Virus record (IMG/VR): IMGVR_UViG_3300008110_000030
Location: 62,001-126,000 of that record
DNA length: 64,000 nucleotides
Reading direction: 5' to 3' (one strand)
In this document: positions 8,871 to 61,650 of the stretch, in pieces
How the letters are laid out: each line of letters opens with the position of its first letter
How positions within the stretch are numbered: the stretch's first letter is position 1
Program-made: the position numbers and the translations under genes
The notes under the pieces: generated by a model
Databases searched by the model: none
What the model saw: the letters and a program-made list of their open reading frames with translations, nothing else
What the model was told of the DNA's origin: nothing

Positions 8871-9468
8871 ACGATATCGAGCCGTAGTACAGACTCAGAG
8901 ATTTTTATTGAGAATCTTAACTACACCTAGAGTTCCAAAAGCTGTTAAAGATGAAGCTAGATATTGTTTGCGTCATTATCCTAGCAATTGGGATATGCAA
9001 CGTGCGGCAGAAGGTTCTCCGGATGTTTTCCAAGAACGTATGGATGACCTACATAAATTTTTACTTAAAGGTTCAGAAATGAAAGCAAAAGAATTGTTTG
9101 AAAATATTGAAGAGCTGGCAGCTGTCAGTGACGAGGCATTGGATAATGCATACCATTATGGGCGCAGTACTCCAGGTGCTAACTTTGGATGGCTTGCCAA
9201 TATTGAAAGTGCCAAGGCAGCATCAAATCTTATTAATAGTGGTGAAACAAATATTGAAGTAATTGCAGACGCAATCCACGATGGTTGGAATATTACTGCA
9301 ATGAAAGATTATAATGGTGAACTAAAATTAGACACGCCTACTCCACAAGAGAAAAAAGAAAAGAGAGCCGCACTTGCTCGGCAGTCGTATGCTCAACTTC
9401 CTGAAGTTGAGAAAGAGAAAGATAGAGTAGTGGCACGTGCCCTGCTTAAATTTATTAAAGGTGTATAA
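8854..9468 (+). CDS. two-module protein: small N-terminal domain plus a leader-tagged RyR-domain-like C-terminal module
   Basis: GAGG RBS before ATG 8854; internal in-frame ATG 9079 (MKAKELFE) after AAAGGT; C-terminal IHDGW...YAQLPEVEKEKDR resembles the RyR repeat consensus. Confidence 0.6.
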   Translation: MTLPDERYRAVVQTQRFLLRILTTPRVPKAVKDEARYCLRHYPSNWDMQRAAEGSPDVFQERMDDLHKFLLKGSEMKAKELFENIEELAAVSDEALDNAYHYGRSTPGANFGWLANIESAKAASNLINSGETNIEVIADAIHDGWNITAMKDYNGELKLDTPTPQEKKEKRAALARQSYAQLPEVEKEKDRVVARALLKFIKGV

Positions 9469-9914: not shown

Positions 9915-9924
9915 AGGAAACAAA

Positions 9925-17357: not shown

Positions 17358-17360
17358 AAT

Positions 17361-42347: not shown

Positions 42348-42348
42348 T

Positions 42349-45405: not shown

Positions 45406-45443
45406 AAAGGCAGCTTGACAGTTGCCTTTCTTTGTTATATAAT
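45406..45443 (+). terminator. terminator-like hairpin fused to a consensus sigma70 promoter
   Basis: AAAGGCAGC-TTGACA-GTTGCCTTT followed by CTTT; TTGACA (45415-45420), 17 bp, TATAAT (45438-45443). Confidence 0.8.
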
Positions 45444-45449
45444 AGTGTT

Positions 45450-46292
45450 ATGAAAGATTATTATGCAATCCTTGGTGTTCCAAAAACCGCAAGTGCTGAG
45501 GAAATCAAAAAAGCATTTAGAAAAGCCGCAATGAAGCACCATCCTGACCGGGGTGGCGATCAACAACGATTCAAAGAAATTAACGAAGCACACGAAATTC
45601 TCTCAGACAGAGAAAAACGTATGCAGTTAGATCAAGGCATTGATCCACTAAATCCAAATCAAAGAACTTATAGAAGTCAGAATTTTAATCAAGGCTTCAA
45701 TAATATGGAAGATATCTTTCAAAACTTTGGTTTTGATTTTGGATTTACTCCACGCGGTTTTAGACCACAACCCCCTACAAAAAATAAATCCTTTAATGTT
45801 CAAATGACATTGACATTAGAAGAAGCGTTTACTGGGATCAATAAAAATATCACAATCACGCATCCTGGCGGTGTTGGTAAAAATGTAGGAATTAATATTC
45901 CACCTGGCATTGACAATGGCATGGCTATACGTTATGCTGGCATGGGAGATGACAGTATTGGTGGATTACCTGCAGGTGATTTAACAATTATAATTAATAT
46001 CGCTCCTCACCCAGTGTATGCTAGAGAAGGACTAAATTTATTAACTGATGTTACTATTGACTGTTTTGATTCTATACTAGGCACAAGTGCTGAAATTGAC
46101 ACATTAGATGGTAGAAGGTTGCAAGTAGTAGTTCCTGCTGGAACACAACCAGGAACTACACTGGGATTGAAGAATGAAGGAATGCGTGACCAACAGGGCA
46201 ATGTTGGAAAACTATATGTAAGAGTTAATGTTAGCGTTCCTAAAATTACTGATCCTATTAAATTATCTTTAATCAAACAACTTAAAAATTAA
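45450..46292 (+). CDS. dnaJ: DnaJ/CbpA-type J-domain co-chaperone (no Zn finger)
   Basis: [19 protein letters not shown]-rich linker, C-terminal GDL and PAGTQPG; ATG at 45450. Confidence 0.9.
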
Positions 46293-46300
46293 ATATTAAT

Positions 46301-46813
46301 ATGGTAAAACTTGTATTTCATCCAGATCCAATATTAGAAGAACAAATGCCAGCATTTGATTTTGATAATCCTATTATGGATCCAAAAGAATTAGAAAAAG
46401 AATTACTAGCAATTATGTTTGCCAATAATGGAATTGGACTTGCGAGTCCACAAATTGGCATTAAAACTAGAGTATTTGCAATGGGACATTCACTCATGCC
46501 TGAAGCAAGTCTTGCTATGTTTAATCCAACAGTAATTGACGCTAGTAACGAATTTCAAGATATAGAAGAAGGCTGTTTAAGTTTTCCAAATATTTTTGCT
46601 AAAATTAAAAGACCTACTTGGATTGTTGTAAAATACAATACTAGTGATAATGAAGAACGAACTGAACGAATGGAAGGTTACAACTGTAAATGTTTTTTAC
46701 ATGAATTGGACCACTTAGATGGTATCGTAATGAAAGATCGTTTAAGTCAACTTAAATGGGCGTTAGCCGTTAAAAAATCAAAAAAGGTAAAAAATTATGC
46801 TAGAACCAAATGA
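46301..46813 (+). CDS. def: peptide deformylase
   Basis: GIGLASPQ, EGCLS, HELDH. Confidence 0.95.
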   Translation: MVKLVFHPDPILEEQMPAFDFDNPIMDPKELEKELLAIMFANNGIGLASPQIGIKTRVFAMGHSLMPEASLAMFNPTVIDASNEFQDIEEGCLSFPNIFAKIKRPTWIVVKYNTSDNEERTERMEGYNCKCFLHELDHLDGIVMKDRLSQLKWALAVKKSKKVKNYARTK

Positions 46814-49772: not shown

Positions 49773-50201
49773 ATGCCAGCACTAAGCGAAACACTACTTT
49801 TTACATCGGGTACGGATTCAAACGGAAACCCAAATAAAACATCGAGTCTAACATATCCATCTGGGGTAAGTGGCGCTCAAACATATTATAGTGACAAAAT
49901 CAAGGGCGAAGGTTATTACGGTGGAAACGGCTTACATACCGGCGGGTACACTCCATGGCCTGAATCTAATCTAGTTAACCCTGGTGAGAACAATAACTTT
50001 AGAGGCGCCATACAGCTTCAAGCAAGTCTAGTAACAAATCCAGCAGAATCTGATTGGTTTGCTATTGTTGGTACAGATGCTACGTTTGATGGCACAGATC
50101 AATCCAATAGATTTCTTAATTTTGTAGGTAATTTTGTTTGGATTCGTGCAAAAGTTGTTATAACACAAGGCGTTTTAACGTCAATTCAAGTCAATCACTA
50201 A
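49773..50201 (+). CDS. probable virion protein
   Basis: TAAATA 7 nt upstream; KGEGYYG, LQASL...P...DWF, NFVGNFVWIRA. Confidence 0.6.
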   Translation: MPALSETLLFTSGTDSNGNPNKTSSLTYPSGVSGAQTYYSDKIKGEGYYGGNGLHTGGYTPWPESNLVNPGENNNFRGAIQLQASLVTNPAESDWFAIVGTDATFDGTDQSNRFLNFVGNFVWIRAKVVITQGVLTSIQVNH

Positions 50202-50284
50202 TATTGGTACTAGCTCAATTCAAATAAATACATGATAGTTAAAATCATGGTACCTTTACCATGGGTGAGTAAGGCACATATATC

Positions 50285-50653
50285 ATGAAATTATTTGAAT
50301 TTTTTAGTCAGAATACAACTGAACCAGAAGAGAAAGAAAATGACGACCAAATACGTAAGGACGTCATGGCCTTTATACTCGATGATAATGACATCTATCG
50401 AGAGAAACTTCTCCCACTGATCCACAAGCACAATAAGAACGTTAAAGATGAAGATTTACGTAAAGATTACGTAAAAGTTATCAACGACTGTTGCATCGAA
50501 TTTTATAAAGAAAAAGAATTAAAAACAGATCCAAACAAACTTTTTCCAAAAGCAATGAGAAATGAGATGATAAAACAACTCATTAAGATCAATAAAGAAA
50601 ATATTACTACAAAGAAGAATAAAAAAGATGAAGATACGAGATCTGTTATTTGA
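50285..50653 (+). CDS. hypothetical protein with MKLFEFF leader
   Basis: First gene of the leader-tagged array; TAAATA at 50225. Confidence 0.65.
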   Translation: MKLFEFFSQNTTEPEEKENDDQIRKDVMAFILDDNDIYREKLLPLIHKHNKNVKDEDLRKDYVKVINDCCIEFYKEKELKTDPNKLFPKAMRNEMIKQLIKINKENITTKKNKKDEDTRSVI

Positions 50654-51014
50654 AGGTAGGATTGATCCTACTCTTTTAAATCATTTTCTTAAACACTGTT
50701 CTGAAGAATTGGGTCTTGAATCGTTACCTAAAATTAATCTCATAGATAACAAAGAATATTCAGTAACACACAAATCATTTGGCGGTTATCAGCCAGGCGA
50801 AAAATCAATAATTTTATCCACTAAGGATAGACACCCAGTTGATGTGTTTAGAACACTAGCACATGAACTAACTCACTATAAACAAGATTTAGACGGACAA
50901 CTTGAAGGGGACGATGTTGGTGCCACAGGTAGTCCAGAAGAAAATGAAGCTAATTCTGTTGCAGGCGTAATAATGCGTAACTTTGGTCAGAAGTTTCCAG
51001 AAGTATTTGAATAA
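50628..51014 (+). CDS. zincin-like metallopeptidase domain with MKIRDLLFE leader
   Basis: RTLAHELTH (HExxH) and downstream ENEAN. Confidence 0.7.
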   Translation: MKIRDLLFEGRIDPTLLNHFLKHCSEELGLESLPKINLIDNKEYSVTHKSFGGYQPGEKSIILSTKDRHPVDVFRTLAHELTHYKQDLDGQLEGDDVGATGSPEENEANSVAGVIMRNFGQKFPEVFE

Positions 51015-51022
51015 GGACCATC

Positions 51023-52036
51023 ATGCGTATTAAAGATCTATTTGAAGGCGGGTGGGATACTACCAAAACACAAAACACTGTACTACATCCTAAAATTGTA
51101 AGTGTTGCCTTATCTGTAGTAGATCGATTTGTTGTTGATTTCAATAACTTTATTAAAAATAAAAACGTTGGTCAAATTAAACGTGGAAGACCAACAGGTA
51201 GCAGTGCATACCATGAACAAGACGCCATTGAAAGACCAGATACAATTTATGGCGATATTGATTTACAAATGATTGCACCGCCAGTTGAAGGATTAACTTA
51301 CGGACAGTTTAGTGGTTATTGGAATAAACTAGCAGATGATTTTGTTAAGACTGCAAATCCTGCGTATGTAGACACAACTGAAAGCAAACCTGGTCATCCA
51401 ATTTTCCAAGTTGGTAAACAAGACTATGTTCAAATTGACTTTATGTGGCATGAGCAAAAAATGGCGGATTGGGGTGCTACTCGTGTAACTCCAGAACGTG
51501 GTATCAAAGGTTTACTGTCAGGTAACATGTACAGTGTATTTGGTGAAATACTTGACATGAGTATTCAACATGCTGGAGTACAACTTAAAGTAATTGATGA
51601 CCAACGTGTGCCGTTTAGTAAACAAAAAGATACACAAATAATCACAGTGACAACAAATCCAAAAACATTTATATTAGATGTGTTTATGTATTTGGCCAAA
51701 CGTATGGGCGTGAACAATCCAAGAATTGATCCCATGCTCAAACAGTTCTCTGGCAACGACATTAACGATGTTAAAATAAGCAAACTAGTTAATGGTATGA
51801 AGGGATTTGCCTCAAGTGCAGAAGCAAGTGGTATGTTTGGTAAAGGTGATTTACAAAATTTTAACTCTGCACAAGATTTTATGAATAAGTTTTGGCAACG
51901 TTACGAAGAAAAAGCACAAATTGACATTGCTGGTAAAAAGCGTGACAAAGCACAAACCCCAGATGCTATTGCACGTGCCAATGCAGACAGAGAAAAGATC
52001 CAAAAAGGTCTAGATATGGTTAAAGGATATTTCTAA
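51023..52036 (+). CDS. Pol-beta-superfamily nucleotidyltransferase with MRIKDLFE leader
   Basis: PTGSS...YGDIDL and third acidic residue in VQIDF. Confidence 0.65.
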   Translation: MRIKDLFEGGWDTTKTQNTVLHPKIVSVALSVVDRFVVDFNNFIKNKNVGQIKRGRPTGSSAYHEQDAIERPDTIYGDIDLQMIAPPVEGLTYGQFSGYWNKLADDFVKTANPAYVDTTESKPGHPIFQVGKQDYVQIDFMWHEQKMADWGATRVTPERGIKGLLSGNMYSVFGEILDMSIQHAGVQLKVIDDQRVPFSKQKDTQIITVTTNPKTFILDVFMYLAKRMGVNNPRIDPMLKQFSGNDINDVKISKLVNGMKGFASSAEASGMFGKGDLQNFNSAQDFMNKFWQRYEEKAQIDIAGKKRDKAQTPDAIARANADREKIQKGLDMVKGYF

Positions 52037-52413
52037 TGAGAGCAAAAGAATTTATAACTGAAATTAAGGCAGGAGCAATATCTAAACGACAAGGCATGTC
52101 AACTACTGGTATAAATTTATATACTGATGCTGAAAGACGAAACAGCGACTATGTGTCATATCGTTTAGGTATGGCAGTTGCTTGTACAGATGGTACAAAC
52201 GATCCTGATATGGATGCTAAAAGTTGGGTTGACAAAAGTAAGACTACTCACCCATATACACCCCAAGAACAAGAAATGCTTAAAAAAGCCTACAAGGCAG
52301 TAGGAGCAAAATGGAAAGATTTAAATCACGGAGATTTAACTAGTCAAGAATTAAAAACAACCAACGTTGTTAGTCCAGTTGCAAAACCTAAACGAAACAA
52401 ATACGGCGTGTAA
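52036..52413 (+). CDS. hypothetical protein with MRAKEFITE leader
   Basis: TAATG coupling; YRLGMAVA, SPVAKPKRNKYGV. Confidence 0.7.
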   Translation: MRAKEFITEIKAGAISKRQGMSTTGINLYTDAERRNSDYVSYRLGMAVACTDGTNDPDMDAKSWVDKSKTTHPYTPQEQEMLKKAYKAVGAKWKDLNHGDLTSQELKTTNVVSPVAKPKRNKYGV

Positions 52414-52425
52414 TGAGAGTTAAAA

Positions 52426-53265
52426 ATGAAAATATTTGAACTGTTAATTGAAAGTGGTAAAAGGCTTGCTAGTCAAGGAGTTGAAGTCTCTAGAGTAAAC
52501 AAAGACGACTTTGTTGCCGCTAAAAATGTTTTAAATCCTATTCTAATCAAAGCAGGAATTAAAGCAGGATGGACTGCTGGCGGTGCTGGTAGTTTTGATC
52601 CTGAACACGACTATGGTGGTGGTGGAAGAGAAGACAGCGGTGATATTGACATTATGATTGACCCTGCAGAACTAGTAGGACGTTTTCCACCCAATGTTGA
52701 AGCATACAATGCCGCAAGTGCAAAACCAATCGGTCCAAAAGCTATGGCCAACGCTATGGCAGATCCAGCTAAAAAAGCCAAGATAGAAATGAGTGCTAGT
52801 AAATGGGCACTGGCTGACTTTATGACAAAAAATGGTTTTAGAACCGACCCAGGAACGCTAACTGTTGAATATACCGCTAGTGGGAAAAGTTTTTCAGTTG
52901 ACTTGATTATACGTCCAAGAAATGCTTGGCCACTACATACTCATGATTTTGCAACTGATCCAAAAATGCGTGGTGGAGATTTATGGATTAACATGTATCC
53001 TGTGTTAGCTAAACTTGCTAGTAAGACAGTTTTTACTGATCCAAAAACTGGTGAAGAAAAAGGCAATATACAATTTAGTCCTGATAAAGGCTTAGTGGAC
53101 AGAGATACTAATAAAGTAATTGCCATTGATAAAAATGACATTGCCAAAATTTTATTAGGTCCACAATTTAGTGCAAAGGATTTGTCAAGTATGACAGGTA
53201 TTAGAAATGCGTTATCTAAACAACCTGAAAAGTTGTCAAAACTACCACAGCCACAAGAGCAATAA
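52426..53265 (+). CDS. Pol-beta-superfamily nucleotidyltransferase with MKIFELLIE leader
   Basis: GGAGS...DSGDIDI and third acidic residue in FSVDL. Confidence 0.65.
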   Translation: MKIFELLIESGKRLASQGVEVSRVNKDDFVAAKNVLNPILIKAGIKAGWTAGGAGSFDPEHDYGGGGREDSGDIDIMIDPAELVGRFPPNVEAYNAASAKPIGPKAMANAMADPAKKAKIEMSASKWALADFMTKNGFRTDPGTLTVEYTASGKSFSVDLIIRPRNAWPLHTHDFATDPKMRGGDLWINMYPVLAKLASKTVFTDPKTGEEKGNIQFSPDKGLVDRDTNKVIAIDKNDIAKILLGPQFSAKDLSSMTGIRNALSKQPEKLSKLPQPQEQ

Positions 53266-53273
53266 ATACAGTT

Positions 53274-55682
53274 ATGAATTTATTTGAACTTTTTTCACCC
53301 ACTAAACAAGCTATTATGGAAGGCATTGACCATCCAGAAGATCTCATTATCTCACAAGGTAGTGCAGGTGCTGACAGGGTATTAAAAGATTTAGCAAGTT
53401 TGGAAAAAGATCCAAACACAGTTACAGTCAAGTGGGACGGATTCCCAGCAGTTGTGTTTGGTAGAGACAAGGGCGGAAACTTAGTGTTTATGGATAAACA
53501 CATGTACGAAAAAGTAGCCTCTGGAAAAATGGACTTTATGTCTATTAAAGATTATGACGAAAGTCGTGGTGCTAATCGTACAAGTTTGATTGATCAAGAA
53601 AGTATTATACGTCCGCTATTAAGTAAAATAGTTCCTAACGTCAAAGATCAATATTGGATGGGTGACTTGATGTGGACTGGTACGCCGCCAGTTAGTAATG
53701 GCGCATTTGTGTTTAAACCAAACACTGTAGAATATCAAGTTGATATAGATCAAACTCCAGGCGTTGGAGATTCATTAAGCGATAACATTGCCAGAAGTGG
53801 GGCAGGAATTGCAGTGCATACTTTTATTCCTGGTTTAGGTCAGCCTGATCAACCACTTGTTGGACTTAAAGGTTTGCCAGAAGATGCTGGTATTACTTTC
53901 CTAGTTGGAGAGATGAAGGACAAGCCACGTGTTGCAATTAATCCTGAACTATTAAATCAAACACAACAAATAATTAATTCTAATAGAAGTGCTGTAGACA
54001 AGTTTTTTGTTGACTTAACTGCAATGAAGGGCAAGAGCGTTATAACTGCTATGGGTCCGTTCATTACACGTATGTTAGAAGACAATGACATCAAAGGTGA
54101 CATTGTTCCTAGATTCTTAGAGTTTTTAGGCGAACGTTTAACTGACAGTGCTAAACAAAAAATGTTAGGCACAAATAAAGATGGTTGGCTTTACCAAGAA
54201 CAGGGCGGTGCTCCTGGACTACTTGGCATTTGGACTATGTGGGCCGCAATTACTGAATTAAAATTAAACGTTAAACAACAAATTGACACACAACAGCAAG
54301 GTAGTAAAATACGTGCTGTTACTGATGGTATCAATGCACATGAAGGTTACGTGTTTGGTGCAGGTAAAGACAAATTAAAACTAGTTGATCGATTAGGATT
54401 CAGCAGAGCAAACTTTGCTAAACACAAAGTTAGTGATGAAGAAGTAGCTGAAAAAAGTAAAATGCCGCTAGCTGTTTTTTGCTTTGGTCGTATGAACCCG
54501 CCAACAATGGGACACGGACTTGTTTTAAATAAAACAGTTGAACTTGGCAAACAAAATGCATTTGTATTTTTAAGCAATAGTGTTGACCCAACAGATAATC
54601 CACTATCGCCAGCAATAAAAGCAAAATTTATTGAACAAATTTATCCTACTACTAAAGGTCATATTGTTACAGATTTTGTACAAAGTCCAATATATGCTGC
54701 CAACTGGCTGTATAGTAAAGGTTATCGTAACATGGCATTTGTTGCTGGTAGTGACCGACTAGGAAAAGAAAAAGGTAGTATTGAAAAACTACTTAGTAGT
54801 TGGAACAGTGGACCAGTTAGAAGTACTGATCCAGCTGGCGCTAGAGACTTTGTAAATATGCAGTACATAAGTGCAGGAGATAGAGATCCTGACGGTGAAG
54901 GAGTTACTGGCTACAGTGGAACTAAAGCTCGTCAAGCAGTGACTGCGAACAATGAACAACAGTTTCAAAATTATACTGGAATTGGTAGCGACATTGTGGT
55001 TAACGGAAAAACGTTATACCAGTCAGTCAAAGAAGGTATGGGCATAAGAGACCAGGCACTAGCGCAACCTGCTGTTGTTAAACAACCTGCAACGCCAAAT
55101 GTACAAGTAACTAAAAAGATTCCAGGAAAAGCACCAGCACAGGAGTTGGACACAATGAATGAAACTACCTTAAAAAATAAGGAAGATTTACAAGCAAAAC
55201 GTAAAGCATTACAAGATATTCAGATGGATAAACATACACATAAGGATCCACAATTGAGTGCTGAATTAGCTAGACGCAAAGCATCTTTAGAGCGTGAAGC
55301 AAAGAAAAAAGGTATTGCTGAATCAATTGTTGAGTCAATTGGTATTTTAGAAGAACAACAAAATTTCTTAAGAAGACAAAAGTTAAATGAGGCACCAATT
55401 GAAATGGATCCACAAAATCCAAATGATCCAATGGTTATGCCTCCTGGACTTAATCCAGGTAAATTAAGTTATCGAAAACAACGAGCTGCCGCACAATTAG
55501 CAGATTTAGCTCGTATGGCTTCGCAGGCAAATGAAAAGAATAGTGCTATAATGTGGGATAGTATTGTTAGACATTTTCCAGAATTGGAAACAAACATTCG
55601 TAGCATACAACATGGTATGCAAGAATTAGAAAAAGTGCGTCGTGCAGGCGGCAAACGAAGCAAGGGAATTGAAAAAATATGA
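53274..55682 (+). CDS. fusion of an RNA-ligase-like (KxDG) domain and a HIGH-superfamily nucleotidyltransferase, with charged C-terminal modules
   Basis: VKWDG, MGDL, HEGYV, KLVDR; then FGRMNPPTMGH, NPLS, VAGSDR, YSGTKAR; MNLFELF leader; TAAATA at 53263. Confidence 0.7.
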   Translation: MNLFELFSPTKQAIMEGIDHPEDLIISQGSAGADRVLKDLASLEKDPNTVTVKWDGFPAVVFGRDKGGNLVFMDKHMYEKVASGKMDFMSIKDYDESRGANRTSLIDQESIIRPLLSKIVPNVKDQYWMGDLMWTGTPPVSNGAFVFKPNTVEYQVDIDQTPGVGDSLSDNIARSGAGIAVHTFIPGLGQPDQPLVGLKGLPEDAGITFLVGEMKDKPRVAINPELLNQTQQIINSNRSAVDKFFVDLTAMKGKSVITAMGPFITRMLEDNDIKGDIVPRFLEFLGERLTDSAKQKMLGTNKDGWLYQEQGGAPGLLGIWTMWAAITELKLNVKQQIDTQQQGSKIRAVTDGINAHEGYVFGAGKDKLKLVDRLGFSRANFAKHKVSDEEVAEKSKMPLAVFCFGRMNPPTMGHGLVLNKTVELGKQNAFVFLSNSVDPTDNPLSPAIKAKFIEQIYPTTKGHIVTDFVQSPIYAANWLYSKGYRNMAFVAGSDRLGKEKGSIEKLLSSWNSGPVRSTDPAGARDFVNMQYISAGDRDPDGEGVTGYSGTKARQAVTANNEQQFQNYTGIGSDIVVNGKTLYQSVKEGMGIRDQALAQPAVVKQPATPNVQVTKKIPGKAPAQELDTMNETTLKNKEDLQAKRKALQDIQMDKHTHKDPQLSAELARRKASLEREAKKKGIAESIVESIGILEEQQNFLRRQKLNEAPIEMDPQNPNDPMVMPPGLNPGKLSYRKQRAAAQLADLARMASQANEKNSAIMWDSIVRHFPELETNIRSIQHGMQELEKVRRAGGKRSKGIEKI

Positions 55683-56740
55683 AAATTACACAACTTTTAG
55701 ACGAAGCAAAAAAAGGTGTTAAGGCACCTAAGCATACTGTCAAACCTAGAAACTTTGTAGCTAAAAACGCTATAGCCACTACTAGTGGTGCTGGCGCACA
55801 CAAGGATAAAAAGAAAGCCGCTAAACAAGGCGATGTTAAGCACAAAGGCAAAGAGCTTGCTGAAGATACTCGTGCCGAGTTAGCTTTTAAAGATTTAGAT
55901 GCAGAAATATCAGGCGACAGTACCAATGTATCTGATCTAGAACAACGAGCATCAGCATTAAGAAAACAAATGCCTGTGCAAAAACCAACTCGAGTAGCTG
56001 ACTTACCAGATGTTGATCAATACGAAAATGCAAAAAGATTTGGAAAATTTAATGGATCATACGGGGATTGGTTAAAAAATAAAGGCATGAAAGAAAATAC
56101 ATTGCAAGGTGTGGAGGAAGAAAAACAAAAAGGTGTTGATGGCAAGGCCTGTTGGAAAGGCTACAAGCGCATGGGCACCAAGAAGAAAGGTGGCAAGACA
56201 GTAGACAACTGTGTGCCTATGAATGAGAGTTTTGATCCCGAGTATGATGACGAAGCTGGTATGGCAGACAATAACCTTGAAACTTTAAAAAGAGCAGTAG
56301 AAGGTTTAGACGACATGATTAACGAAGGCGACAACTTGCCTGAATGGTGTCAAGAAAAAATTGCAGTAGCAAAAAGCATGTTAATCTCAGTTTGGGACTA
56401 TATGCAAAGTGAAGAAAATAGTATGTCTGAAAATCAAAGAAATCCTGATCTAATGAGTCAAACTGATTATGATCGATATCAACAAGGTCAAATGGACCAA
56501 CAAAAGCGTGACTTTAAACGTGACGAACTAGAACATGAACTTGGCCATGAAGAGCAAGGCATGTACTATGTTGTAATTGCAAAGAATGGCAAATGGGAAC
56601 ACACTAAAGCGCAGCCTAGACAAGAAGGAATGAATGCCGCACAAAGAATTATTAATGCGTTACATTCAAAATATCCTAGTATGCACTTGGGCATGGTTGG
56701 TCCAGACGGCAAAGTATATAATTATGGTAAGGGCAAATAA
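55679..56740 (+). CDS. modular charged protein with MKITQLLDE leader (probable internal head protein)
   Basis: Short unrelated modules separated by hydrophobic-x-E motifs. Confidence 0.65.
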   Translation: MKITQLLDEAKKGVKAPKHTVKPRNFVAKNAIATTSGAGAHKDKKKAAKQGDVKHKGKELAEDTRAELAFKDLDAEISGDSTNVSDLEQRASALRKQMPVQKPTRVADLPDVDQYENAKRFGKFNGSYGDWLKNKGMKENTLQGVEEEKQKGVDGKACWKGYKRMGTKKKGGKTVDNCVPMNESFDPEYDDEAGMADNNLETLKRAVEGLDDMINEGDNLPEWCQEKIAVAKSMLISVWDYMQSEENSMSENQRNPDLMSQTDYDRYQQGQMDQQKRDFKRDELEHELGHEEQGMYYVVIAKNGKWEHTKAQPRQEGMNAAQRIINALHSKYPSMHLGMVGPDGKVYNYGKGK

Positions 56741-56742
56741 AA

Positions 56743-57177
56743 ATGGATAAGCTACAACTAGCATTAAAAACAGCATTTGCAAGTGAATATTCATTTGCCT
56801 TAAAAGCACAAAATTTCCATTGGAATGTAGAGGGCATGTTCTTTACACAGTTTCATGATTTGTTTGGTGACATTTATACTGAAGTTTATGGAAACATTGA
56901 TGCGTTTGCAGAAAATATTAGAAAAGCAAGAGCATACACCCCAGCAAGTTTAACACGCTTTAGTATGTTAAGTGTTATTCAAGATGAAACAGAAATATTA
57001 GAAGCACCAGAGATGTGTGCAGAACTTTTATCAGATTCTGATAAGATGGCTGAAATTCATAGATTAACTTTCCAGTTGTCTGAAGAAGCAGGTGAACACG
57101 GTCTTAGTGATTTTTTAGCTGGAAGACAAGATGCCTTCCGCAAACACTCTTGGATGTTAAGAGCCACATTGAAATGA
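56743..57177 (+). CDS. dps: Dps / ferritin-like DNA-protection protein
   Basis: AQNFHWNVEG..F..FH.LF...Y, D..AE.IR, KHSWML. Confidence 0.9.
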   Translation: MDKLQLALKTAFASEYSFALKAQNFHWNVEGMFFTQFHDLFGDIYTEVYGNIDAFAENIRKARAYTPASLTRFSMLSVIQDETEILEAPEMCAELLSDSDKMAEIHRLTFQLSEEAGEHGLSDFLAGRQDAFRKHSWMLRATLK

Positions 57178-57224
57178 AGATCAAAGAATTATTAGAACAT
57201 AAACAAACGCATGAAACAATATAG
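57174..57224 (+). other. orphan 16-codon ORF consisting of the array leader (MKIKELLEHKQTHETI)
   Basis: ATGA overlap with the dps stop; matches the leader consensus. Confidence 0.5.
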
Positions 57225-57504
57225 AATTACTACTGATAATATTGTTAATGACAGTCCTGATGATTGTTATTTAGATCCTACTGACCCTTTGAATGAGATA
57301 AAGGCTCTACAATATCTTGGTGGTATCAATTCGTTAAATAGACTACAAGAGTACAAAGGTATGCAAGGTAGTAATATTAGTGCAACTGGCTCAGAGAAGG
57401 GAAGGCTACAGCGAGAAAACAATATTAAACCAGGAACTCCTGAATGGTTTAAATTGTGGTTTAGTTTACCGTATATGACTGGCGAGAGGCCTATTGAAAA
57501 ATGA
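57211..57504 (+). CDS. hypothetical protein
   Basis: IKPGTPEWFKLWF motif; ATGA overlap with the next gene. Confidence 0.65.
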   Translation: MKQYRITTDNIVNDSPDDCYLDPTDPLNEIKALQYLGGINSLNRLQEYKGMQGSNISATGSEKGRLQRENNIKPGTPEWFKLWFSLPYMTGERPIEK

Positions 57505-58655
57505 AAATAAGAGATTTATTAGAGTTATCAAAATCTAGTCCACTAGGCAAATTCATTGATAAAGTAGATACAGATTATTCTGTAGGGGCAACCACAGATA
57601 AGATTGGCAATGCAATTTCTAACGTTTTTAAAAATTATTCTAATGATAAAACAGATGCACCTACTAAAAGTGAAGTTCCTGTAACAGTAGCAAAACCTGC
57701 ATCAAGTTCAACTGCTGTAAGTTCTGAAGTTGTTGCTCAAGAATTAGATAGACAAGGAATCACTGACCCAAATTTAAGAAAATCAATTATGGGGAAATTT
57801 GGTCAAGAATCAGGCGGAAACACTAGAGTCACTGAAATTCCTTATAAGAATACAAGTAATGATATTATTAGATTAAGATTACCGCAACTTAGAAGTATGA
57901 GTGATAATGAATTAAATGATTTAAAACAAGATACAGAAAAATTTTTTAATAGGGCGTATGGATATAAAGGTAATTCGTTAAACAATACCGAACCAGGTGA
58001 TGGTTACAAATACAGGGGCCGTGGTCTAACTGGTATCACTGGTAAAGTAAATTACCAAAGAGCTGATGATGCATTAGGTTTAAAAGGCGAGCTAGTTAAA
58101 AATCCTGATCTACTATTAGATCCAGAAATTGATAAAAGAGCTTCTGTTTGGTTTTATAAGGCAGCTGGCGCGGATAAAGTAACTTTTGCCAATCAAGAAG
58201 ATGCTAATAAGTGGGCTATACACAAGGCTGGTGGGAACATGTATGCTCCTGGCACTGAGTTAGGAAATATCGCATTAAATGATTTGAATAAAAGAACGGC
58301 CGTAATTGGTGCGGTAGCTGCCACTGGGATTGTGGCAGGTCCAACTTTAGTAAGAAAAGCAGACACTGTAATAGATAGGGTTAAAAATCTCTTAGGCAAA
58401 ACAGCCGACAGTGCTAAATCAGTTGTAGGACAAACAGTAAACACTGCCAGAAATACTGCTATAGCAACTGCATTGGGTTCAGGATCTAGCAGTGGAAGTG
58501 GTGGAGGCTTTTATGGCGGAAGTGGATCAGCTCCAGAAGAACAAGAAGTGACATTAATAATTAATGGCAAACGTAAAAAATTTAAAAATAAAAGAGAAGC
58601 AAAAATTGCAATGGACATTGCAAGATCACAAGGGATAGATGCAAGATATGGGTAA
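57501..58655 (+). CDS. second GH19/lysozyme-like protein with MKIRDLLE leader (probable virion-associated muramidase)
   Basis: GQESGG, GDGYKYRGRGLTGITGKVNY, NPDLL. Confidence 0.75.
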   Translation: MKIRDLLELSKSSPLGKFIDKVDTDYSVGATTDKIGNAISNVFKNYSNDKTDAPTKSEVPVTVAKPASSSTAVSSEVVAQELDRQGITDPNLRKSIMGKFGQESGGNTRVTEIPYKNTSNDIIRLRLPQLRSMSDNELNDLKQDTEKFFNRAYGYKGNSLNNTEPGDGYKYRGRGLTGITGKVNYQRADDALGLKGELVKNPDLLLDPEIDKRASVWFYKAAGADKVTFANQEDANKWAIHKAGGNMYAPGTELGNIALNDLNKRTAVIGAVAATGIVAGPTLVRKADTVIDRVKNLLGKTADSAKSVVGQTVNTARNTAIATALGSGSSSGSGGGFYGGSGSAPEEQEVTLIINGKRKKFKNKREAKIAMDIARSQGIDARYG

Positions 58656-59256
58656 GCCAGAAGTTTATTTAGATATGGACGGAGTTATTGCAGACTTTTT
58701 TACAGAGTATGCTAAACTTGCGGGCATTGAATCAGGGAACTACAGAGATATTCCACCAGCAAAAACAGATCCTACATTAAACAAAATGATAGGTACAGAC
58801 TTCTTTGCACGTCTACCAAAATGCAGAAATGCAGATGCACTAGTAGACTTAATAGTAAAAACATTTGGTACTTATAATATTTGTTCAAGTCCTCTGCGTG
58901 GTGATCATGCAAACAGTGAAAAACAAAAAAAGATTTGGCTTGGCAACAATCTAAAATACCAACCTAAAGATGTTGTAATTACACCAAACAAAGCCAAATG
59001 GGCCAAACAAACAGATGGAACTCCTAACATTTTAATTGATGATAGAGGAAGTAACATTAGTTCATGGGAAGCCGCTGGTGGTATTGGTATCAAATATCAA
59101 GCAGACGAAGACAACTTACAAGTAATTGTACAAGGTATTAAAAGAGCATTTTCTGTTATAAAAGGTGAAGAGAAACACGACCCTCAAAAGTTAAAAAGTT
59201 TAGATCGTAGTAATGGTAATTTAATTGCTACTAGTGGTGATAAAGACGCCCATTAA
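58639..59256 (+). CDS. HAD-superfamily 5'(3')-deoxyribonucleotidase-like phosphatase
   Basis: YLDMDGVIADF, CSSP, K..W, ILIDD, W.AAGG.GI. Confidence 0.85.
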   Translation: MQDMGKPEVYLDMDGVIADFFTEYAKLAGIESGNYRDIPPAKTDPTLNKMIGTDFFARLPKCRNADALVDLIVKTFGTYNICSSPLRGDHANSEKQKKIWLGNNLKYQPKDVVITPNKAKWAKQTDGTPNILIDDRGSNISSWEAAGGIGIKYQADEDNLQVIVQGIKRAFSVIKGEEKHDPQKLKSLDRSNGNLIATSGDKDAH

Positions 59257-59265
59257 GGACATCAT

Positions 59266-59502
59266 ATGAAAATTCAAGAAATTATCACAGAAACTGCTAC
59301 AGCTGGATCAACAAGTGCTAGTAATATTGCTAGTACTGGAAACAGTCCACACGTTGCAGTTGGAAGCCCTGCAGTGATTAAACGATGGGGCGGAAGTCCT
59401 GGTAAAATGGGTAAAAGTCCAGAACCAGCTAAAACTAAGTCTCAAGACGCCGATGATAACCCTGTCACTAACCCAAGTGTCGGTAATAACCTAGTTGCAT
59501 AA
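59266..59502 (+). CDS. small protein with MKIQEIITE leader
   Basis: AAGGA RBS; ETATAGSTSASNIAS. Confidence 0.7.
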   Translation: MKIQEIITETATAGSTSASNIASTGNSPHVAVGSPAVIKRWGGSPGKMGKSPEPAKTKSQDADDNPVTNPSVGNNLVA

Positions 59503-59522
59503 ATATAGTATTGGAGAACAAA

Positions 59523-60866
59523 ATGCCTTTTAAATCAGCTAAACAGAAAAAAACAATAGATGCGGCAGCACATAATCCTGCTTTTGCAAAAAAAGTAGGA
59601 ATTAAGACCGGTGATGCCAAAAAAATGTCTGCACATGGTAAGGGTCAAACTAAGTTTGAAGAAGCCAAAGATACTGTAGAAAAAGATGAAAAAGGCAACG
59701 TTAAATCATGGAAGCACGAAGGCGACTGGAAAAAAGCTGATAACAAACAAGGACGTGGAAAAGTGACTAATTTAAGCGACAAGGCTCGTAGACAAACAGC
59801 AAAGATGAGCAAGGCTGAAACTGAAATGGCTGAAGCATTTGAACAAGCATTAGAAGGTGCTGGATCTCCAACAGTTACGCATGGTCCAAACAAAGGCAAA
59901 AAATGGAGTCCAGAAACTCCAGGGCCAACAAACCCAAGTTATAAAAGTATAGACAAAGGCATCCCTAGTCCACCAGATGGTGCAACTGCTCCTCCTCCTG
60001 GTTACAAGCCTCCAAAGCCTAGCAAACGTGCAGAAGTTACACCTACAAGTGACAGTGACGACACAGCCATGACCGCAGAAAGTTCTTCTAAGAAAGTAAT
60101 GAAGAAGTTACGTGCTAAACACATGATGGAGTCAATTAAAGTGTTAGGAGAATTAATTGCAGAAGCTAAAAAATCTGCAAAAAAGAAAAGTACTAAAGTA
60201 AAAGAAGATCCTAACGAAGGTAATGCATTTGGTAAAGCAGTGCAAGATGCTAAAAAAGACGGCATACAAAAAGGTGAAAAAGTCAAAGTTGGTGGTAAAG
60301 AATATCCAGTAAAAGAAGCTGCCAATGAAAAATGCAATCATACACCAAAAGGTAAAAAGTGCCCAGTACACGGTTTGAAAGAGTGTGGTTCAATGTATGA
60401 AGGCAATGACGGTAACTTGGCCAATAATGCCAAACCATATGACAAAGTCACACGTGGTGATGTTATTGCTGGTCGTTTGGGCAAAGACGAAATGGGCGGT
60501 AAGAAAAAGAAAGATAAAAAGACTACTGAAACATTTATGCCTGTAAACAAGGAAAAGCCACAAGGACCAGTTGATAAGGCAATTGGTAATGTGACCAAGG
60601 CAGTTGGTGGTGCAATTAAAACTGTTGCAGACAAAGTAAAAGGTGCAACTGGAGACACTGACGTAAAAACAGACGAGTCATATACTGTCAATGGTAAGAA
60701 AGTGTCCAAAGCTGCCTATGATAAAGAAATGAAAAAAGCTGGCAAAGGTAAAGAAAAAGTTAAAGAAGGTTGGACACACGATACACTAGCCGCAAGATTA
60801 TTTGAAAGTGGTGACGAGTATATGGTTTCATTACATAACAGATTAAGCCAAAAAATAAAAGGTTAA
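59523..60866 (+). CDS. highly charged modular protein (probable internal head/core protein)
   Basis: TAAATA at 59500, GGAG RBS, ATG at 59523; many hydrophobic-x-E-(G/A/S) motifs. Confidence 0.65.
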   Translation: MPFKSAKQKKTIDAAAHNPAFAKKVGIKTGDAKKMSAHGKGQTKFEEAKDTVEKDEKGNVKSWKHEGDWKKADNKQGRGKVTNLSDKARRQTAKMSKAETEMAEAFEQALEGAGSPTVTHGPNKGKKWSPETPGPTNPSYKSIDKGIPSPPDGATAPPPGYKPPKPSKRAEVTPTSDSDDTAMTAESSSKKVMKKLRAKHMMESIKVLGELIAEAKKSAKKKSTKVKEDPNEGNAFGKAVQDAKKDGIQKGEKVKVGGKEYPVKEAANEKCNHTPKGKKCPVHGLKECGSMYEGNDGNLANNAKPYDKVTRGDVIAGRLGKDEMGGKKKKDKKTTETFMPVNKEKPQGPVDKAIGNVTKAVGGAIKTVADKVKGATGDTDVKTDESYTVNGKKVSKAAYDKEMKKAGKGKEKVKEGWTHDTLAARLFESGDEYMVSLHNRLSQKIKG

Positions 60867-60878
60867 TCCACTAATACT

Positions 60879-60904
60879 AACAGGGCACAAGTTGCCCTGT
60901 TCTT
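60879..60904 (+). terminator. probable terminator ending the array
   Basis: AACAGGGCA-CAAGT-TGCCCTGTT followed by CTT. Confidence 0.7.
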
Positions 60905-60915
60905 ACGACTGACTC

Positions 60916-60943
60916 TTGACTTCTTTATAAATGATAGTATAAT
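60916..60943 (+). promoter_or_regulatory. sigma70-type promoter
   Basis: TTGACT (60916-60921), 16 bp, TATAAT (60938-60943). Confidence 0.7.
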
Positions 60944-61587: not shown

Positions 61588-61638
61588 TGGTTGATCCAGC
61601 CACAATTGGATATATTGGTTTGCAAGCCGTAAGTTGCA
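61588..61638 (+). promoter_or_regulatory. tandem RNA hairpins abutting the polymerase RBS (candidate translational operator)
   Basis: TGGTT-G-ATCCA-GCCACAAT-TGGAT and TGGTT-TGCAA-GCCGTAAG-TTGCA, immediately followed by GAGGAG. Confidence 0.55.
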
Positions 61639-61650
61639 GAGGAGAAAAAT

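What the first reader, a model, noticed from the sequence alone, without database searches (positions are those of the whole stretch)
50285..60866. Array of genes sharing a capsid-targeting-like N-terminal tag: a candidate head-packaged, co-injected enzyme kit
Seen: ten ORFs in about 9 kb, otherwise unrelated, start with the same 7-9 aa leader. They are MKLFEFF (50285), MKIRDLLFE (50628), MRIKDLFE (51023), MRAKEFITE (52036), MKIFELLIE (52426), MNLFELF (53274), MKITQLLDE (55679), MKIKELLE (57174), MKIRDLLE (57501) and MKIQEIITE (59266). Late-type TAAATA boxes lie at 50225, 53263 and 59500, and a terminator-like hairpin closes the block. Known: T4 internal proteins carry a 10-aa capsid targeting sequence (MKTYQEFIAE) that prohead protease gp21 cleaves after Glu, and these proteins are injected with the DNA. 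Inference: the leader is a portable packaging tag that has been attached to diverse enzymes (zincin, two NTases, ligase/NTase fusion, GH19). They could then act before any phage gene is expressed. The untagged Dps and HAD genes inside the array serve as internal controls.
Basis: partly seen in the sequence, partly recalled or inferred. Interest (0 to 1): 0.88.

Follow-up and report, generated by a model that had tools for sequence, protein, structure and literature searches.

The report
Shared head-targeting tag on phage enzymes
In an uncultured giant T4-related phage, nine otherwise unrelated neighbouring genes (several of them enzymes) begin with the same 8-9-residue peptide, which closely resembles phage T4's capsid-targeting, protease-cleaved leader. 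These proteins are therefore probably loaded into the phage head and delivered into the host with the DNA; this extends a known T4 trick and is not a new principle.

Summary
Nine real ORFs and one 16-codon gene remnant between 50285 and 59502 start with M-[KR]-[IAL]-x-[DE]-[LIF]-[LIF]-x-E. The same motif matches 12 of 2258 ATGs in the window, against 0.67 in shuffles. The protein bodies are unrelated, and conservation is at the amino-acid level only.

The leader ends in [LI]-x-E, the cleavage motif of the T4 gp21 (S77) prohead protease. This is true of 11 of 11 leader ORFs against 2 of 57 other proteins. AlphaFold models it as disordered. It stays at the extreme N-terminus in about 700 homologues, including forms with extra fused domains.

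In the closest cultured relative, Pseudomonas phage PA5oct, three of the four leader-bearing proteins are mass-spectrometry-confirmed virion proteins (p = 0.027). One of them is the small protein encoded between the portal gene and the S77 protease gene. A related contig places four leader genes inside the head module, two of them ADP-ribosyltransferases, which recalls T4 Alt.

The array sits behind an ATAAATA late-promoter-like box and ends at a hairpin.

Verdict: this is a T4-CTS-like head-targeting propeptide on enzyme cargo, a new variant of a known kind. Packaging, cleavage and injection are inferred, not shown. This phage's own protease gene was not reached.

The parts
50224..50230 (+). 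ATAAATA late-promoter-like box, 61 nt upstream of the first array gene. A 7-bp hairpin (50246-50263) lies in the presumed 5' UTR.
   Evidence: The motif is depleted in the window (9 found against 26.8 expected) and occurs only on the + strand. It lies 23-46 nt upstream of the portal gene in 59 of 78 related phages.
50285..50653 (+). Tagged gene 1: 122 aa, starts MKLFEFF (variant leader with L-F-E at residues 3-5). No known domain.
   Evidence: The same MKLFE-type leader is found on PA5oct gp279, a virion protein by MS.
50628..51014 (+). Tagged gene 2: 128 aa, starts MKIRDLLFE|G. Zincin-like, with an HELTH (HExxH) motif.
   Evidence: DUF6782, E = 0.002; phrog_87 metalloprotease, E = 2e-4. The domain support is weak.
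51023..52036 (+). Tagged gene 3: 337 aa, starts MRIKDLFE|GG. Pol-beta-fold nucleotidyltransferase of unknown specificity (GDIDLQ motif).
   Evidence: 707 homologues; the leader sits directly before an invariant EGGWDTT; pLDDT 88, residues 1-11 disordered; Pol beta/lambda/TdT and cGAS at TM about 0.3.
52036..52413 (+). Tagged gene 4: 125 aa, starts MRAKEFITE|I. Basic (pI 9.4), no known domain.
52426..53265 (+). Tagged gene 5: 279 aa, starts MKIFELLIE|S. Possibly a second Pol-beta-type NTase (SGDIDIMI motif).
   Evidence: hhalign against the gene-3 family: probability 17%, E = 0.0014. No Pfam or PDB hit.
53274..55682 (+). Tagged gene 6: 802 aa, starts MNLFELFSPTKQAIME|G. DUF6267 (ligase-like, KWDG motif; residues 18-385), a cytidylyltransferase-like domain (374-596) and a C-terminal tail. 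An ATAAATA box lies at 53262.
   Evidence: E16 is invariant; the cyanophage P-HM2 homologue starts near this point; residues 1-18 disordered. The fold search was not significant; ligases recur among the weak hits.
55679..56740 (+). Tagged gene 7: 353 aa, starts MKITQLLDE|A. Carries a weak DUF7230 match and a C-W-x-G-Y motif shared with a cyanophage protein annotated 'possible cytitidyltransferase'.
56743..57177 (+). Untagged Dps/ferritin-like gene inside the array.
   Evidence: (PF00210, E = 5.5e-16).
57174..57224 (+). Remnant of a tagged gene (MKIKELLE|H..., 16 codons). The body has been deleted.
   Evidence: L007 has the intact 223-aa gene, with a weak M15/VanY-like peptidase match.
57211..57504 (+). 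Untagged 97-aa gene of unknown function.
57501..58655 (+). Tagged gene 8: 384 aa, starts MKIRDLLE|L. A GH19-type muramidase/chitinase-like domain (residues about 66-228) behind a 65-aa N-terminal extension.
   Evidence: 27% identity, E = 1e-9, to the phage's own untagged endolysin at 41712-42347.
58639..59256 (+). Untagged HAD-type 5'-3' deoxyribonucleotidase.
   Evidence: phrog_2643, E = 4.6e-21.
59266..59502 (+). Tagged gene 9: 78 aa, starts MKIQEIITE|T. Low-complexity small protein.
59499..60866 (+). ATAAATA box (59499-59505) and the last, untagged gene of the block. It is listed from TTG 59511 but more likely starts at ATG 59523.
   Evidence: A GGAG lies 7 nt before ATG 59523.
60883..60906 (+). 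Terminator-like hairpin (7-bp G+C-rich stem followed by TTCTT) closing the block. A sigma-70-like promoter follows at 60916-60943.
9079..9468 (+). Possible eleventh leader outside the array (MKAKELFE|N; 129 aa; weak RyR-domain match). The ATG is in frame inside the longer ORF 8833-9468, so the true start is uncertain.

Best explanation
The shared 8-9-residue N-terminus is a capsid-targeting propeptide of the T4 CTS type.

Proposed mechanism:
1. The block 50285-60866 is transcribed late as one tightly packed operon.
2. The leader docks each tagged protein onto the scaffolding core of the assembling prohead.
3. The S77 (gp21-type) prohead protease then removes the leader by cutting after the Glu of [LI]-x-E.
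4. The mature enzymes stay in the head with the DNA and are ejected into the host at infection. They can then act before any phage gene is expressed.

Shown:
- The motif, its positional specificity and its peptide-level conservation.
- Its disorder and its detachability from the fold.
- The fit to the published gp21 cleavage motif.
- Virion presence of leader-bearing proteins in PA5oct.
- S77 proteases and leader genes within the head modules of relatives.
- The late-promoter-like box.

Inferred:
- Docking, cleavage and packaging in this particular phage.
- Ejection into the host.
- What the cargo does. The tagged cargo comprises a GH19 wall hydrolase, a zincin, Pol-beta-type NTases and a ligase-like/cytidylyltransferase protein. 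My guess is local wall digestion plus early action on host or phage nucleic acids or nucleotides.
For: - Motif enrichment and N-terminal specificity; unrelated protein bodies; amino-acid-level conservation only.
- [LI]-x-E within the first 10 residues in 11 of 11 leader ORFs against 2 of 57 other proteins.
- T4 gp21 cuts after L/I-X-E. T4 propeptides are 7-65 aa long. The CTS is the first 10 aa of IPIII, with residues 4 and 7 needed for targeting and 8 and 10 for processing (PMC9026906). The leader has hydrophobic residues and the I/L-x-E at the equivalent places.
- AlphaFold models: residues 1-11 of the NTase and 1-18 of the DUF6267 protein are disordered and the folds start right after them.
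- Of the 120 listed proteins among 707 NTase homologues, 98 carry the leader directly before EGGWDTT. Of the 22 longer forms, most with added domains (for example GNAT), the 15 I inspected nearly all keep a leader at or near the N-terminus.
- The cyanophage P-HM2 homologue of DUF6267 is untagged and starts at the predicted cut. An untagged GH19 endolysin sits in the lysis cassette while the tagged paralogue sits in the array.
- PA5oct: strict leaders on gp333, gp279 and gp246, all ESI-MS/MS virion proteins, and on gp213, which was not detected. Fisher one-sided p = 0.027 against the 93/461 base rate (PMC7318152).
- gp333 lies between the portal gene and the Peptidase_S77 gene. Its counterparts in RaK2, Atu_ph07 and Serratia phage BF have leader-like N-termini.
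- L064: four leader genes lie between the portal gene and the S77 protease gene, two of them with ART-PolyVal domains.
- ATAAATA lies upstream of the array, of the window's tail-fibre genes, and of 59 of 78 related portal genes.
Against: - There are no proteomic, cleavage or injection data for this phage.
- Its own head module and S77 protease were not reached.
- PA5oct gp213 carries the leader but is not among the MS-detected proteins, and the 3-of-4 test is small.
- Two leaders (50285 and 53274) have no Glu at position 8-9; they have only L-F-E at residues 3-5, plus I-M-E at 15-17 in 53274.
- The Glu before GGWDTT is invariant even in internally fused forms, so it may belong to the enzyme fold and not to a cut site.
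- The cargo is unlike classic T4 internal proteins. The NTase is 67-74% identical across hundreds of phages, not hypervariable, and one cargo protein is 88 kDa.
- The same gene set sits in the replication module of cyanophages, where the DUF6267 homologue examined carries no tag. These enzymes therefore do not need packaging to function.
- The ATAAATA boxes at 53262 and 59499 lie only 12 nt from the listed starts.
Confidence: 0.7

Rival explanations
1. The leader targets the proteins to the prohead core, but they are not delivered as effectors. They would act inside the head, for example on packaged DNA ends, or serve as accessory core or scaffold material that is degraded or stays behind.
For: T4 core proteins gp67 and gp68 are cleaved and mostly leave the head. 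The PA5oct protein encoded at that same gene position carries the leader. The cargo includes DNA-related enzymes and sits next to a Dps gene.
Against: In T4, the internal proteins and Alt, which share this kind of tag, are ejected. The ART-PolyVal and GH19 cargo has its likely substrates in the host cell, not in the capsid.
Confidence: 0.12
2. The leader is a recognition tag for the phage's own Clp machinery (ClpA at 46797-49079, ClpP at 9898-10545). It would mark these enzymes for timed unfolding or degradation.
For: The window encodes ClpP (PF00574, E = 1e-64) and a ClpA-type ATPase just upstream of the array. The same genome also carries ClpS, DnaK and HSP20. From general knowledge, Clp unfoldases can read N-terminal signals. 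PA5oct gp213 (leader-bearing, not MS-detected) lies next to its clpP gene.
Against: Three leader-bearing PA5oct proteins are stable virion components. The motif matches the gp21 cleavage logo and marks the head-module protein across the clade. Leader arrays also occur on other T4-like contigs next to the helicase and primase genes, with no Clp gene in view.
Confidence: 0.07
3. The similarity has no protein-level function. It would be a by-product of translation-start constraints (AT-rich early codons, ATGA stop-start overlaps) or of recombination at gene starts that shuffles cassettes.
For: Several genes overlap the preceding stop codon (ATGA), which favours Lys, Arg or Asn as the second residue. 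The array gains and loses genes between close relatives.
Against: Upstream DNA is not conserved, and the Leu, Lys, Arg and Glu codons vary while the residue classes are kept. The pattern extends to residues 5-9 and ends in an invariant Glu. It is kept at the N-terminus through domain fusions. Other overlapping genes in the window lack it.
Confidence: 0.04
4. The leader is another kind of sorting or regulatory signal, for example an inhibitory propeptide, a membrane or periplasm targeting signal, or a docking peptide for a non-capsid complex.
For: Several cargoes are wall-active: GH19 here, and weak M15-like and PG-binding matches in relatives. These must reach the periplasm.
Against: The leader is short, acidic and non-hydrophobic, with no signal-peptide features. 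By contrast, real lipoprotein and signal sequences are seen in genes 42810, 44478 and 44765. It also sits on cytoplasmic-type enzymes and on MS-confirmed virion proteins.
Confidence: 0.05

Closest known systems
T4 capsid targeting sequence (CTS) of internal proteins IPI/IPII/IPIII, and the N-terminal propeptide of Alt
   Same: - A short N-terminal peptide shared by otherwise unrelated proteins.
- It ends in L/I-x-E, the gp21 cleavage motif.
- Hydrophobic residues sit at the positions that matter for targeting.
- Enzyme cargo is precedented: Alt is an ADP-ribosyltransferase, and relatives here tag ART-PolyVal proteins.
- The gene content of the locus varies between strains (PMC9026906, PMC3012670, PMC5694885).
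   Different: - The leader is one residue shorter and has its own consensus.
- The cargo is mostly mid-size to large enzymes, up to 88 kDa.
- Several cargoes are highly conserved across hundreds of uncultured phages and are not hypervariable small basic proteins.
- The host phage belongs to the PA5oct/RaK2-like jumbo clade, not the T-evens.
- The genes form one late operon of nine tagged genes mixed with untagged ones.
Propeptide-bearing ejection and inner-body proteins of phiKZ-like giant phages (phiKZ, 201phi2-1, SPN3US)
   Same: Many head-internal proteins are cut after Glu by a diverged gp21-type protease, and their propeptides are thought to target them to the prohead (PMC5694885).
   Different: Those propeptides are long (often more than 100 aa), are not a shared short motif, and have a different cleavage logo. 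Those phages belong to another lineage.
Phage P1 Dar system (N-terminal capsid targeting signal of DarB)
   Same: An N-terminal signal is sufficient to load a large enzyme and heterologous reporters into the head for delivery and anti-restriction (PMC9024508).
   Different: It is a single 250-kDa cargo that depends on other Dar proteins. There is no shared motif across many genes and no S77-type L/I-x-E processing.
Polyvalent proteins of phages and conjugative elements (Iyer et al. 2017; my own knowledge, except for the Pfam family name)
   Same: A similar domain repertoire (ART-PolyVal, zincin peptidases, wall hydrolases, NTases) that is thought to be delivered with the DNA. The ART-PolyVal domain was found on leader proteins in L064.
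   Different: Here the domains are mostly separate genes, each with its own tag, and are not fused into one giant protein. Some fusions do exist (GNAT plus NTase).
Encapsulin cargo-loading peptides (my own knowledge)
   Same: A short portable peptide loads diverse enzymes into an HK97-fold shell.
   Different: They are usually C-terminal, are not cleaved, and involve no DNA and no delivery to another cell.

Membership tests
T4-type CTS / head-internal protein system | A short N-terminal peptide shared by otherwise unrelated proteins | tested here: met
T4-type CTS / head-internal protein system | The propeptide ends in the gp21 cleavage motif L/I-x-E, 7-20 residues from the start | tested here: met
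   11 of 11 leader ORFs against 2 of 57 controls. The motif definition comes from PMC9026906. Genes 50285 and 53274 fit only through L-F-E at residues 3-5, or I-M-E at 15-17.
T4-type CTS / head-internal protein system | The phage encodes a Peptidase_S77 (gp21-type) prohead protease | tested here: inconclusive
   It is not in the window, and the phage's own head module was not reached. It is present in the relatives examined: PA5oct gp331 (PF03420, E = 5e-24), L064 and L166/L167.
T4-type CTS / head-internal protein system | Tagged proteins are physically present in purified virions | tested here: inconclusive
   There are no data for this phage. In PA5oct, three of four strict-leader proteins are ESI-MS/MS virion proteins (p = 0.027).
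T4-type CTS / head-internal protein system | The leader is removed after Glu during head maturation | not testable with these tools
   This needs a semi-specific MS search or N-terminal sequencing. The PA5oct supplementary tables are not held.
T4-type CTS / head-internal protein system | The leader is sufficient to load a foreign protein, and the cargo is ejected into the host | not testable with these tools
   Requires experiment.
T4-type CTS / head-internal protein system | Sequence homology of the leader or cargo to the T4 internal proteins | tested here: not met
No array protein matches any cultured phage protein except through the DUF6267/cytidylyltransferase and GH19 domains. The conclusion is 'works like', not 'is a member of the IP gene families'.
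T4-type CTS / head-internal protein system | Expression at the time of head assembly | tested here: inconclusive
   An ATAAATA box precedes the array, the window's tail-fibre genes and 59 of 78 related portal genes. There are no transcript data.
Polyvalent proteins | Many effector domains fused into one very large polypeptide | tested here: not met
   The genes are separate, at 78-802 aa. Only the ART-PolyVal domain in L064 and some two-domain fusions are shared.
Pol-beta-superfamily nucleotidyltransferase (gene 51023) | Pol-beta-type NTase fold with a G-[SD]-x-D-x-D-type metal-binding motif | tested here: met
   The model has pLDDT 88. Foldseek matches Pol beta/lambda/TdT, cGAS and CdnC at probability 0.99-1.0 but TM of only about 0.3. 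The YGDIDLQ motif is invariant. Substrate unknown.
ATP-dependent ligase / capping-enzyme type nucleotidyltransferase (DUF6267 part of gene 53274) | KxDG motif I and the ligase adenylyltransferase fold | tested here: inconclusive
   KWDG is invariant. The model has pLDDT 74. No Foldseek match is significant; tRNA, DNA and RNA ligases recur among hits with E > 0.3.

The most novel reading that the evidence does not exclude
The leader is a sequence-readable address label that defines the whole 'ejectome' of a large, mostly uncultured clade of T4-related phages: freshwater and marine jumbo phages, and smaller T4-like phages that keep such arrays next to their helicase and primase genes. On this reading the cargo is not the usual fast-evolving anti-restriction proteins. 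It is a strongly conserved, pre-made enzyme kit: a Pol-beta-type NTase, a ligase-like/cytidylyltransferase protein, a zincin and wall hydrolases, plus ADP-ribosyltransferases and GNAT fusions in relatives. The kit would modify or repair nucleic acids or nucleotides in the first seconds of infection.
Probability: 0.35. Interest if true: 0.75.

Novelty: new variant of a known kind. Interest (0 to 1): 0.6.

Why it matters
If the tag works as in T4, injected proteins of uncultured giant and marine T4-like phages can be read straight from sequence. That would give a catalogue of first-strike effectors. It includes an abundant, highly conserved nucleotidyltransferase family (more than 700 homologues, no Pfam family, no cultured representative) whose function is unknown. 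It would also show that capsid targeting by a short cleavable peptide is an old feature of the T4 superfamily, shared well beyond the T-evens. Finally, it would offer a short portable tag for loading proteins into jumbo-phage heads.

Tried and rejected
1. Nucleotide search of the array against 50,697 phage records: no match. A tblastn search with the NTase also found nothing. The array therefore has no cultured counterpart.

2. I tried to reach this phage's own head module.
   - Two portal-based scans of IMG/VR did not return its contig.
   - A portal contig from a sister sample (L102) is not on the 350-kb JGI record by exact-protein look-up.
   - The L045 phage is a different, 453-kb phage.
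   - Walking about 30 kb leftwards from the window found only chaperone and auxiliary genes.
   I gave this up.

3. PA5oct has no homologue of the array apart from the cytidylyltransferase domain and the 142-aa structural protein. It could therefore only be used to test the leader, not the cargo.

4. Sequence searches of PDB with the NTases and the 802-aa protein gave nothing useful. NCBIfam also gave nothing useful. Foldseek with the DUF6267 model was not significant.

5. The canonical T4 late promoter TATAAATA is absent from the window: 0 found against 6.6 expected. The relevant box is ATAAATA.

6. I considered whether the leader genes are paralogues. This is rejected by all-against-all BLASTP. 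Only genes 51023 and 52426 might be distant relatives.

7. No Rfam or tRNA features occur in the window.

8. The PA5oct supplementary proteomics tables are not held, so N-terminal peptide coverage could not be checked.

Full report
**What the window is.** The 64-kb window is part of an uncultured giant myovirus. It matches IMG/VR contig 3300008110_000030 (214.6 kb), and the same phage lies on a 349,857-bp JGI contig. It encodes RIIA/RIIB, a clamp loader, a GroES-like protein, DnaJ, ClpA, ClpP, Fe-S cluster genes and very large tail-fibre proteins. Its closest cultured relatives are the Pseudomonas PA5oct group (clamp loader 55% identical), followed by Atu_ph07, XacN1 and the RaK2-like phages. 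It has no nucleotide-level match to any sequenced phage.

**The observation.** Nine belong to real ORFs of 78-802 aa. The tenth, at 57174, is a 16-codon stub. In a 96%-identical relative (L007) the same leader opens an intact 223-aa gene with a weak M15/VanY-like peptidase match. The window has lost the body of that gene at an AAACAA microhomology, and a 75% relative (L009) lacks the gene altogether.

The motif M-[KRN]-[ILVA]-x-[DEQ]-[LIF]-[LIFV] matches 12 of 2258 ATGs in six frames, against a mean of 0.67 (maximum 4) in shuffles. It is roughly 280-fold enriched at protein position 2 relative to internal positions. None of about 57 other proteins in the window starts this way. The one possible exception is ATG 9079, which lies in frame inside a longer ORF.

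The protein bodies are unrelated. The DNA upstream of the starts is not conserved and codon choice varies, so selection acts on the peptide. Orthologues at 75% identity keep the pattern while changing individual residues.

**Anatomy of the block.**
- There is no intergenic gap longer than 40 nt between 50285 and 60866, and several genes overlap by ATGA.
- An ATAAATA box lies at 50224, 61 nt before the first gene. Two more lie at 53262 and 59499.
- The canonical T4 late promoter TATAAATA is absent from the window (0 found against 6.6 expected).
- ATAAATA is depleted (9 found against 26.8 expected) and occurs only on the coding strand. Eight of the nine copies lie 12-101 nt before a gene start. 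These genes include the tail-fibre genes at 26980 and 34641 and a virion protein gene at 10587.
- In 59 of 78 related phages the same heptamer lies 23-46 nt upstream of the portal gene, against a background of 3.7%. I take it to be the core of the clade's late promoter.
- A G+C-rich hairpin followed by TTCTT comes after the last gene, and a good sigma-70-like promoter (TTGACT-16-TATAAT) opens the next unit.
- The block therefore looks like one late operon that mixes nine tagged genes with four untagged ones: Dps, a 97-aa ORF, a 5'-3' deoxyribonucleotidase and the last gene.

**What the leader looks like.** Every leader contains [LI]-x-E within the first ten residues, usually ending at residue 8 or 9. 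Only 2 of 57 control proteins have this.

The published facts for T4 are as follows (PMC9026906, PMC5694885, PMC3012670):
- gp21 cuts after L/I-X-E.
- Virion proteins lose N-terminal propeptides of 7 (Alt) to 65 residues.
- The first ten residues of IPIII are the capsid targeting sequence. Residues 4 and 7 matter for targeting, and residues 8 and 10 for processing.
- The T-even internal proteins are a diverse set that share only the CTS.

Aligned with a one-residue gap, the leader has hydrophobic residues at the two targeting positions and I/L and E at the two processing positions.

**The leader is a detachable add-on.**
- AlphaFold models of the 337-aa protein (pLDDT 88) and of the first 400 residues of the 802-aa protein (pLDDT 74) leave residues 1-11 and 1-18 disordered. 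The folds start immediately afterwards.
- The 337-aa protein has 707 homologues at E < 0.001, of which 120 were listed. Of these, 98 carry an 8- or 9-residue leader directly before an invariant EGGWDTT.
- The other 22 are longer, most with extra N-terminal modules such as a GNAT domain or a 45-residue insert. Of the 15 I inspected, nearly all keep a leader at or near the N-terminus, whatever follows it.
- The cyanophage P-HM2 homologue of the DUF6267 domain has no leader and starts about where the cut is predicted. The invariant Glu16 of the tagged forms marks that point.
- The phage has a normal, untagged GH19 endolysin in a lysis cassette at 41712-43079. The tagged 384-aa protein is a 27%-identical paralogue with a 65-residue extension that begins with the leader.

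**Link to heads.** PA5oct has a T4-type head module: portal, a 73-aa protein (gp333), gp332, a Peptidase_S77 protease (PF03420, E = 5e-24), gp330 and a Gp23-family capsid protein.

I scanned 276 of PA5oct's 287 kb on both strands, allowing any start codon. The remainder lies inside one giant gene. The strict leader occurs four times:
- gp333 (MKINDIITE|G)
- gp279 (MKLFEVF, the variant seen at window gene 50285)
- gp246 (GTG start, then KIKDILVE|S)
- gp213

The GenBank record marks the first three as ESI-MS/MS virion proteins. The genome-wide rate is 93 of 461 (PMC7318152), giving Fisher one-sided p = 0.027.

The small protein encoded after the portal gene starts in a leader-like way in RaK2, Atu_ph07 and Serratia phage BF, and in many uncultured relatives.

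In contig L064, four consecutive leader genes lie between the portal gene and the S77 protease gene (phrog_207, E = 3e-54). Two of them are ART-PolyVal ADP-ribosyltransferases, and one has an HExxH motif like window gene 50628. T4 Alt is likewise a head-packaged, gp21-processed ADP-ribosyltransferase that is ejected into the host.

In other T4-like contigs (L010-L021), leader genes cluster next to the gp41-type helicase and the primase. PA5oct has a run of MS-detected 'structural proteins' at the corresponding place.

**Best explanation and its limits.** I conclude, at about 0.7, that the leader is a CTS-like propeptide. It would dock late-made proteins onto the prohead core and be cut off after Glu by an S77 protease, leaving the enzymes in the head for delivery.

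What is shown and what is inferred:
- The motif statistics, the disorder, the N-terminal constancy, the fit to the gp21 logo, the virion location of leader proteins in PA5oct and the head-module location in relatives are shown.
- Docking, cleavage, packaging in this phage and ejection are inferred.

Points against:
- I could not fetch this phage's own head module.
- PA5oct gp213 is tagged but was not detected.
- Two leaders lack Glu at position 8-9.
- The Glu before GGWDTT is also invariant in internally fused forms, so it may belong to the fold.
- The cargo is unusually conserved for internal proteins.
- Cyanophages keep the same gene set, and the DUF6267 homologue examined there carries no tag.

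**Rivals.**
- A core-only role without delivery (0.12).
- A tag for the phage's own ClpA/ClpP system (0.07). This is suggested by the neighbouring clpA gene and the phage clpP gene, but it fits poorly with stable virion proteins.
- A translation-start or recombination by-product (0.04), contradicted.
- Some other sorting signal (0.05).

**What the cargo may do (inference).** The GH19 protein, and the weakly M15-like peptidase of relatives, could open the wall locally at entry. The zincin, the Pol-beta-fold NTase, the possible second NTase and the KxDG ligase-like/cytidylyltransferase protein could act on host or phage nucleic acids or nucleotides before transcription starts. None of this has been tested.

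**Comparison and novelty.** The mechanism proposed is that of the T4 CTS, so this is not a new principle. The following points are new:
- a distinct consensus in the PA5oct/RaK2-related jumbo clade and in other uncultured T4-like phages;
- nine tagged genes in one late operon;
- enzyme cargo that is large and strongly conserved;
- the practical point that the tag may let injected proteins be predicted from metagenomic sequence.

I rate it a new variant of a known kind, with interest 0.6.

Noticed in passing
window 57174-57224; L007 15911-16582: A tagged gene with a weak M15/VanY-like peptidase match has been deleted in the window, leaving only the leader and seven more codons. The junction has the microhomology AAACAA. 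The gene is intact in the 96% relative and absent in the 75% relative, so the array gains and loses cargo genes.
   Followed up: yes
window 8833-9468 (ATG 9079): A leader-like MKAKELFEN lies in frame inside a 211-aa ORF, two genes upstream of clpP. It could be a separate 129-aa tagged gene (weak RyR-domain match) or an internal coincidence. Gene callers on related contigs take the long form.
   Followed up: partly
window 9898-10545, 36362-36724, 45432-49079; L163 and L165 (upstream of the window on JGI record Ga0620986_00424): The phage carries a full proteostasis set: ClpP, ClpA, DnaJ, peptide deformylase and a GroES-like protein in the window, and DnaK/HSP70, HSP20, ClpS and a second Cpn10 upstream of it.
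   Followed up: partly
L151, L163, L165 (10-30 kb upstream of the window): Auxiliary genes include heme oxygenase plus a ferredoxin-dependent bilin reductase (a pair typical of cyanophages), CsgF/CsgG curli-secretion homologues, FecR, a CHASE2-guanylate cyclase, IMPDH and a Gad2-like protein. The host may be a cyanobacterium, but this was not pursued.
   Followed up: no
window 14710-18045: An ABC-type ATPase and Fe-S cluster assembly genes (an unchecked ORF at 16173-17357, read from position only as NifS/IscS-like; NifU/IscU; an unchecked ORF at 17719-18045, read as IscA-like). An ATAAATA box lies 29 nt before the NifU-like gene.
   Followed up: no
whole window: TATAAATA is absent (0 found against 6.6 expected). 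ATAAATA is three-fold depleted, occurs only on the coding strand and almost always lies just upstream of a gene start. This behaviour fits a late-promoter core that is avoided elsewhere.
   Followed up: yes
window 53262-53320: The ATAAATA at 53262 is only 12 nt from ATG 53274, which is too close to serve that start. A transcript from it would first meet Met15 (53316) and give an untagged DUF6267 protein. Tagged and untagged isoforms are therefore possible.
   Followed up: no
window 59499-59525: The ORF listed from TTG 59511 more likely starts at ATG 59523, which has a GGAG 7 nt upstream and an ATAAATA 24 nt upstream.
   Followed up: partly
window 41712-43079: This is the true lysis cassette: an untagged GH19 endolysin (phrog_181, E = 9e-77), followed by ORFs that from their N-terminal sequences look like a membrane protein and a lipoprotein (spanin-like).
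   Followed up: partly
proteins P0061, P0064, P0092, P0118 and others (homologues of 51023): The conserved NTase occurs fused behind GNAT acetyltransferase or other N-terminal modules. The inspected longer forms nearly all keep a leader at or near the N-terminus. The junction before the NTase core always ends in Glu, so these could be polyproteins cut at two sites.
   Followed up: partly
L064 11725-21043: The head module of a 196-kb relative holds four leader genes. Two minus-strand ORFs lie between the scaffold-like gene and the S77 protease gene; from their Cys-rich repeats I read them as homing-endonuclease-like, but ran no search on them.
   Followed up: partly
PA5oct NC_071039 180252 (gp213) and 148394-160138: gp213 carries a perfect leader but is not among the MS-detected proteins, and it lies next to clpP. 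A run of MS-detected 'structural proteins' (gp259-gp243) follows the primase and helicase genes. Marine T4-like phages keep their leader arrays at the corresponding place.
   Followed up: partly
window 61600-64000: The last 2.4 kb has no long coding-strand ORF, no tRNA and no Rfam match. Its nature is unknown.
   Followed up: partly
window 49773-50201: The 142-aa protein just before the array is related to PA5oct gp185, an MS-detected structural protein (tblastn E = 7e-7). It has L-S-E at residues 4-6, but this is not conserved in L009.
   Followed up: partly
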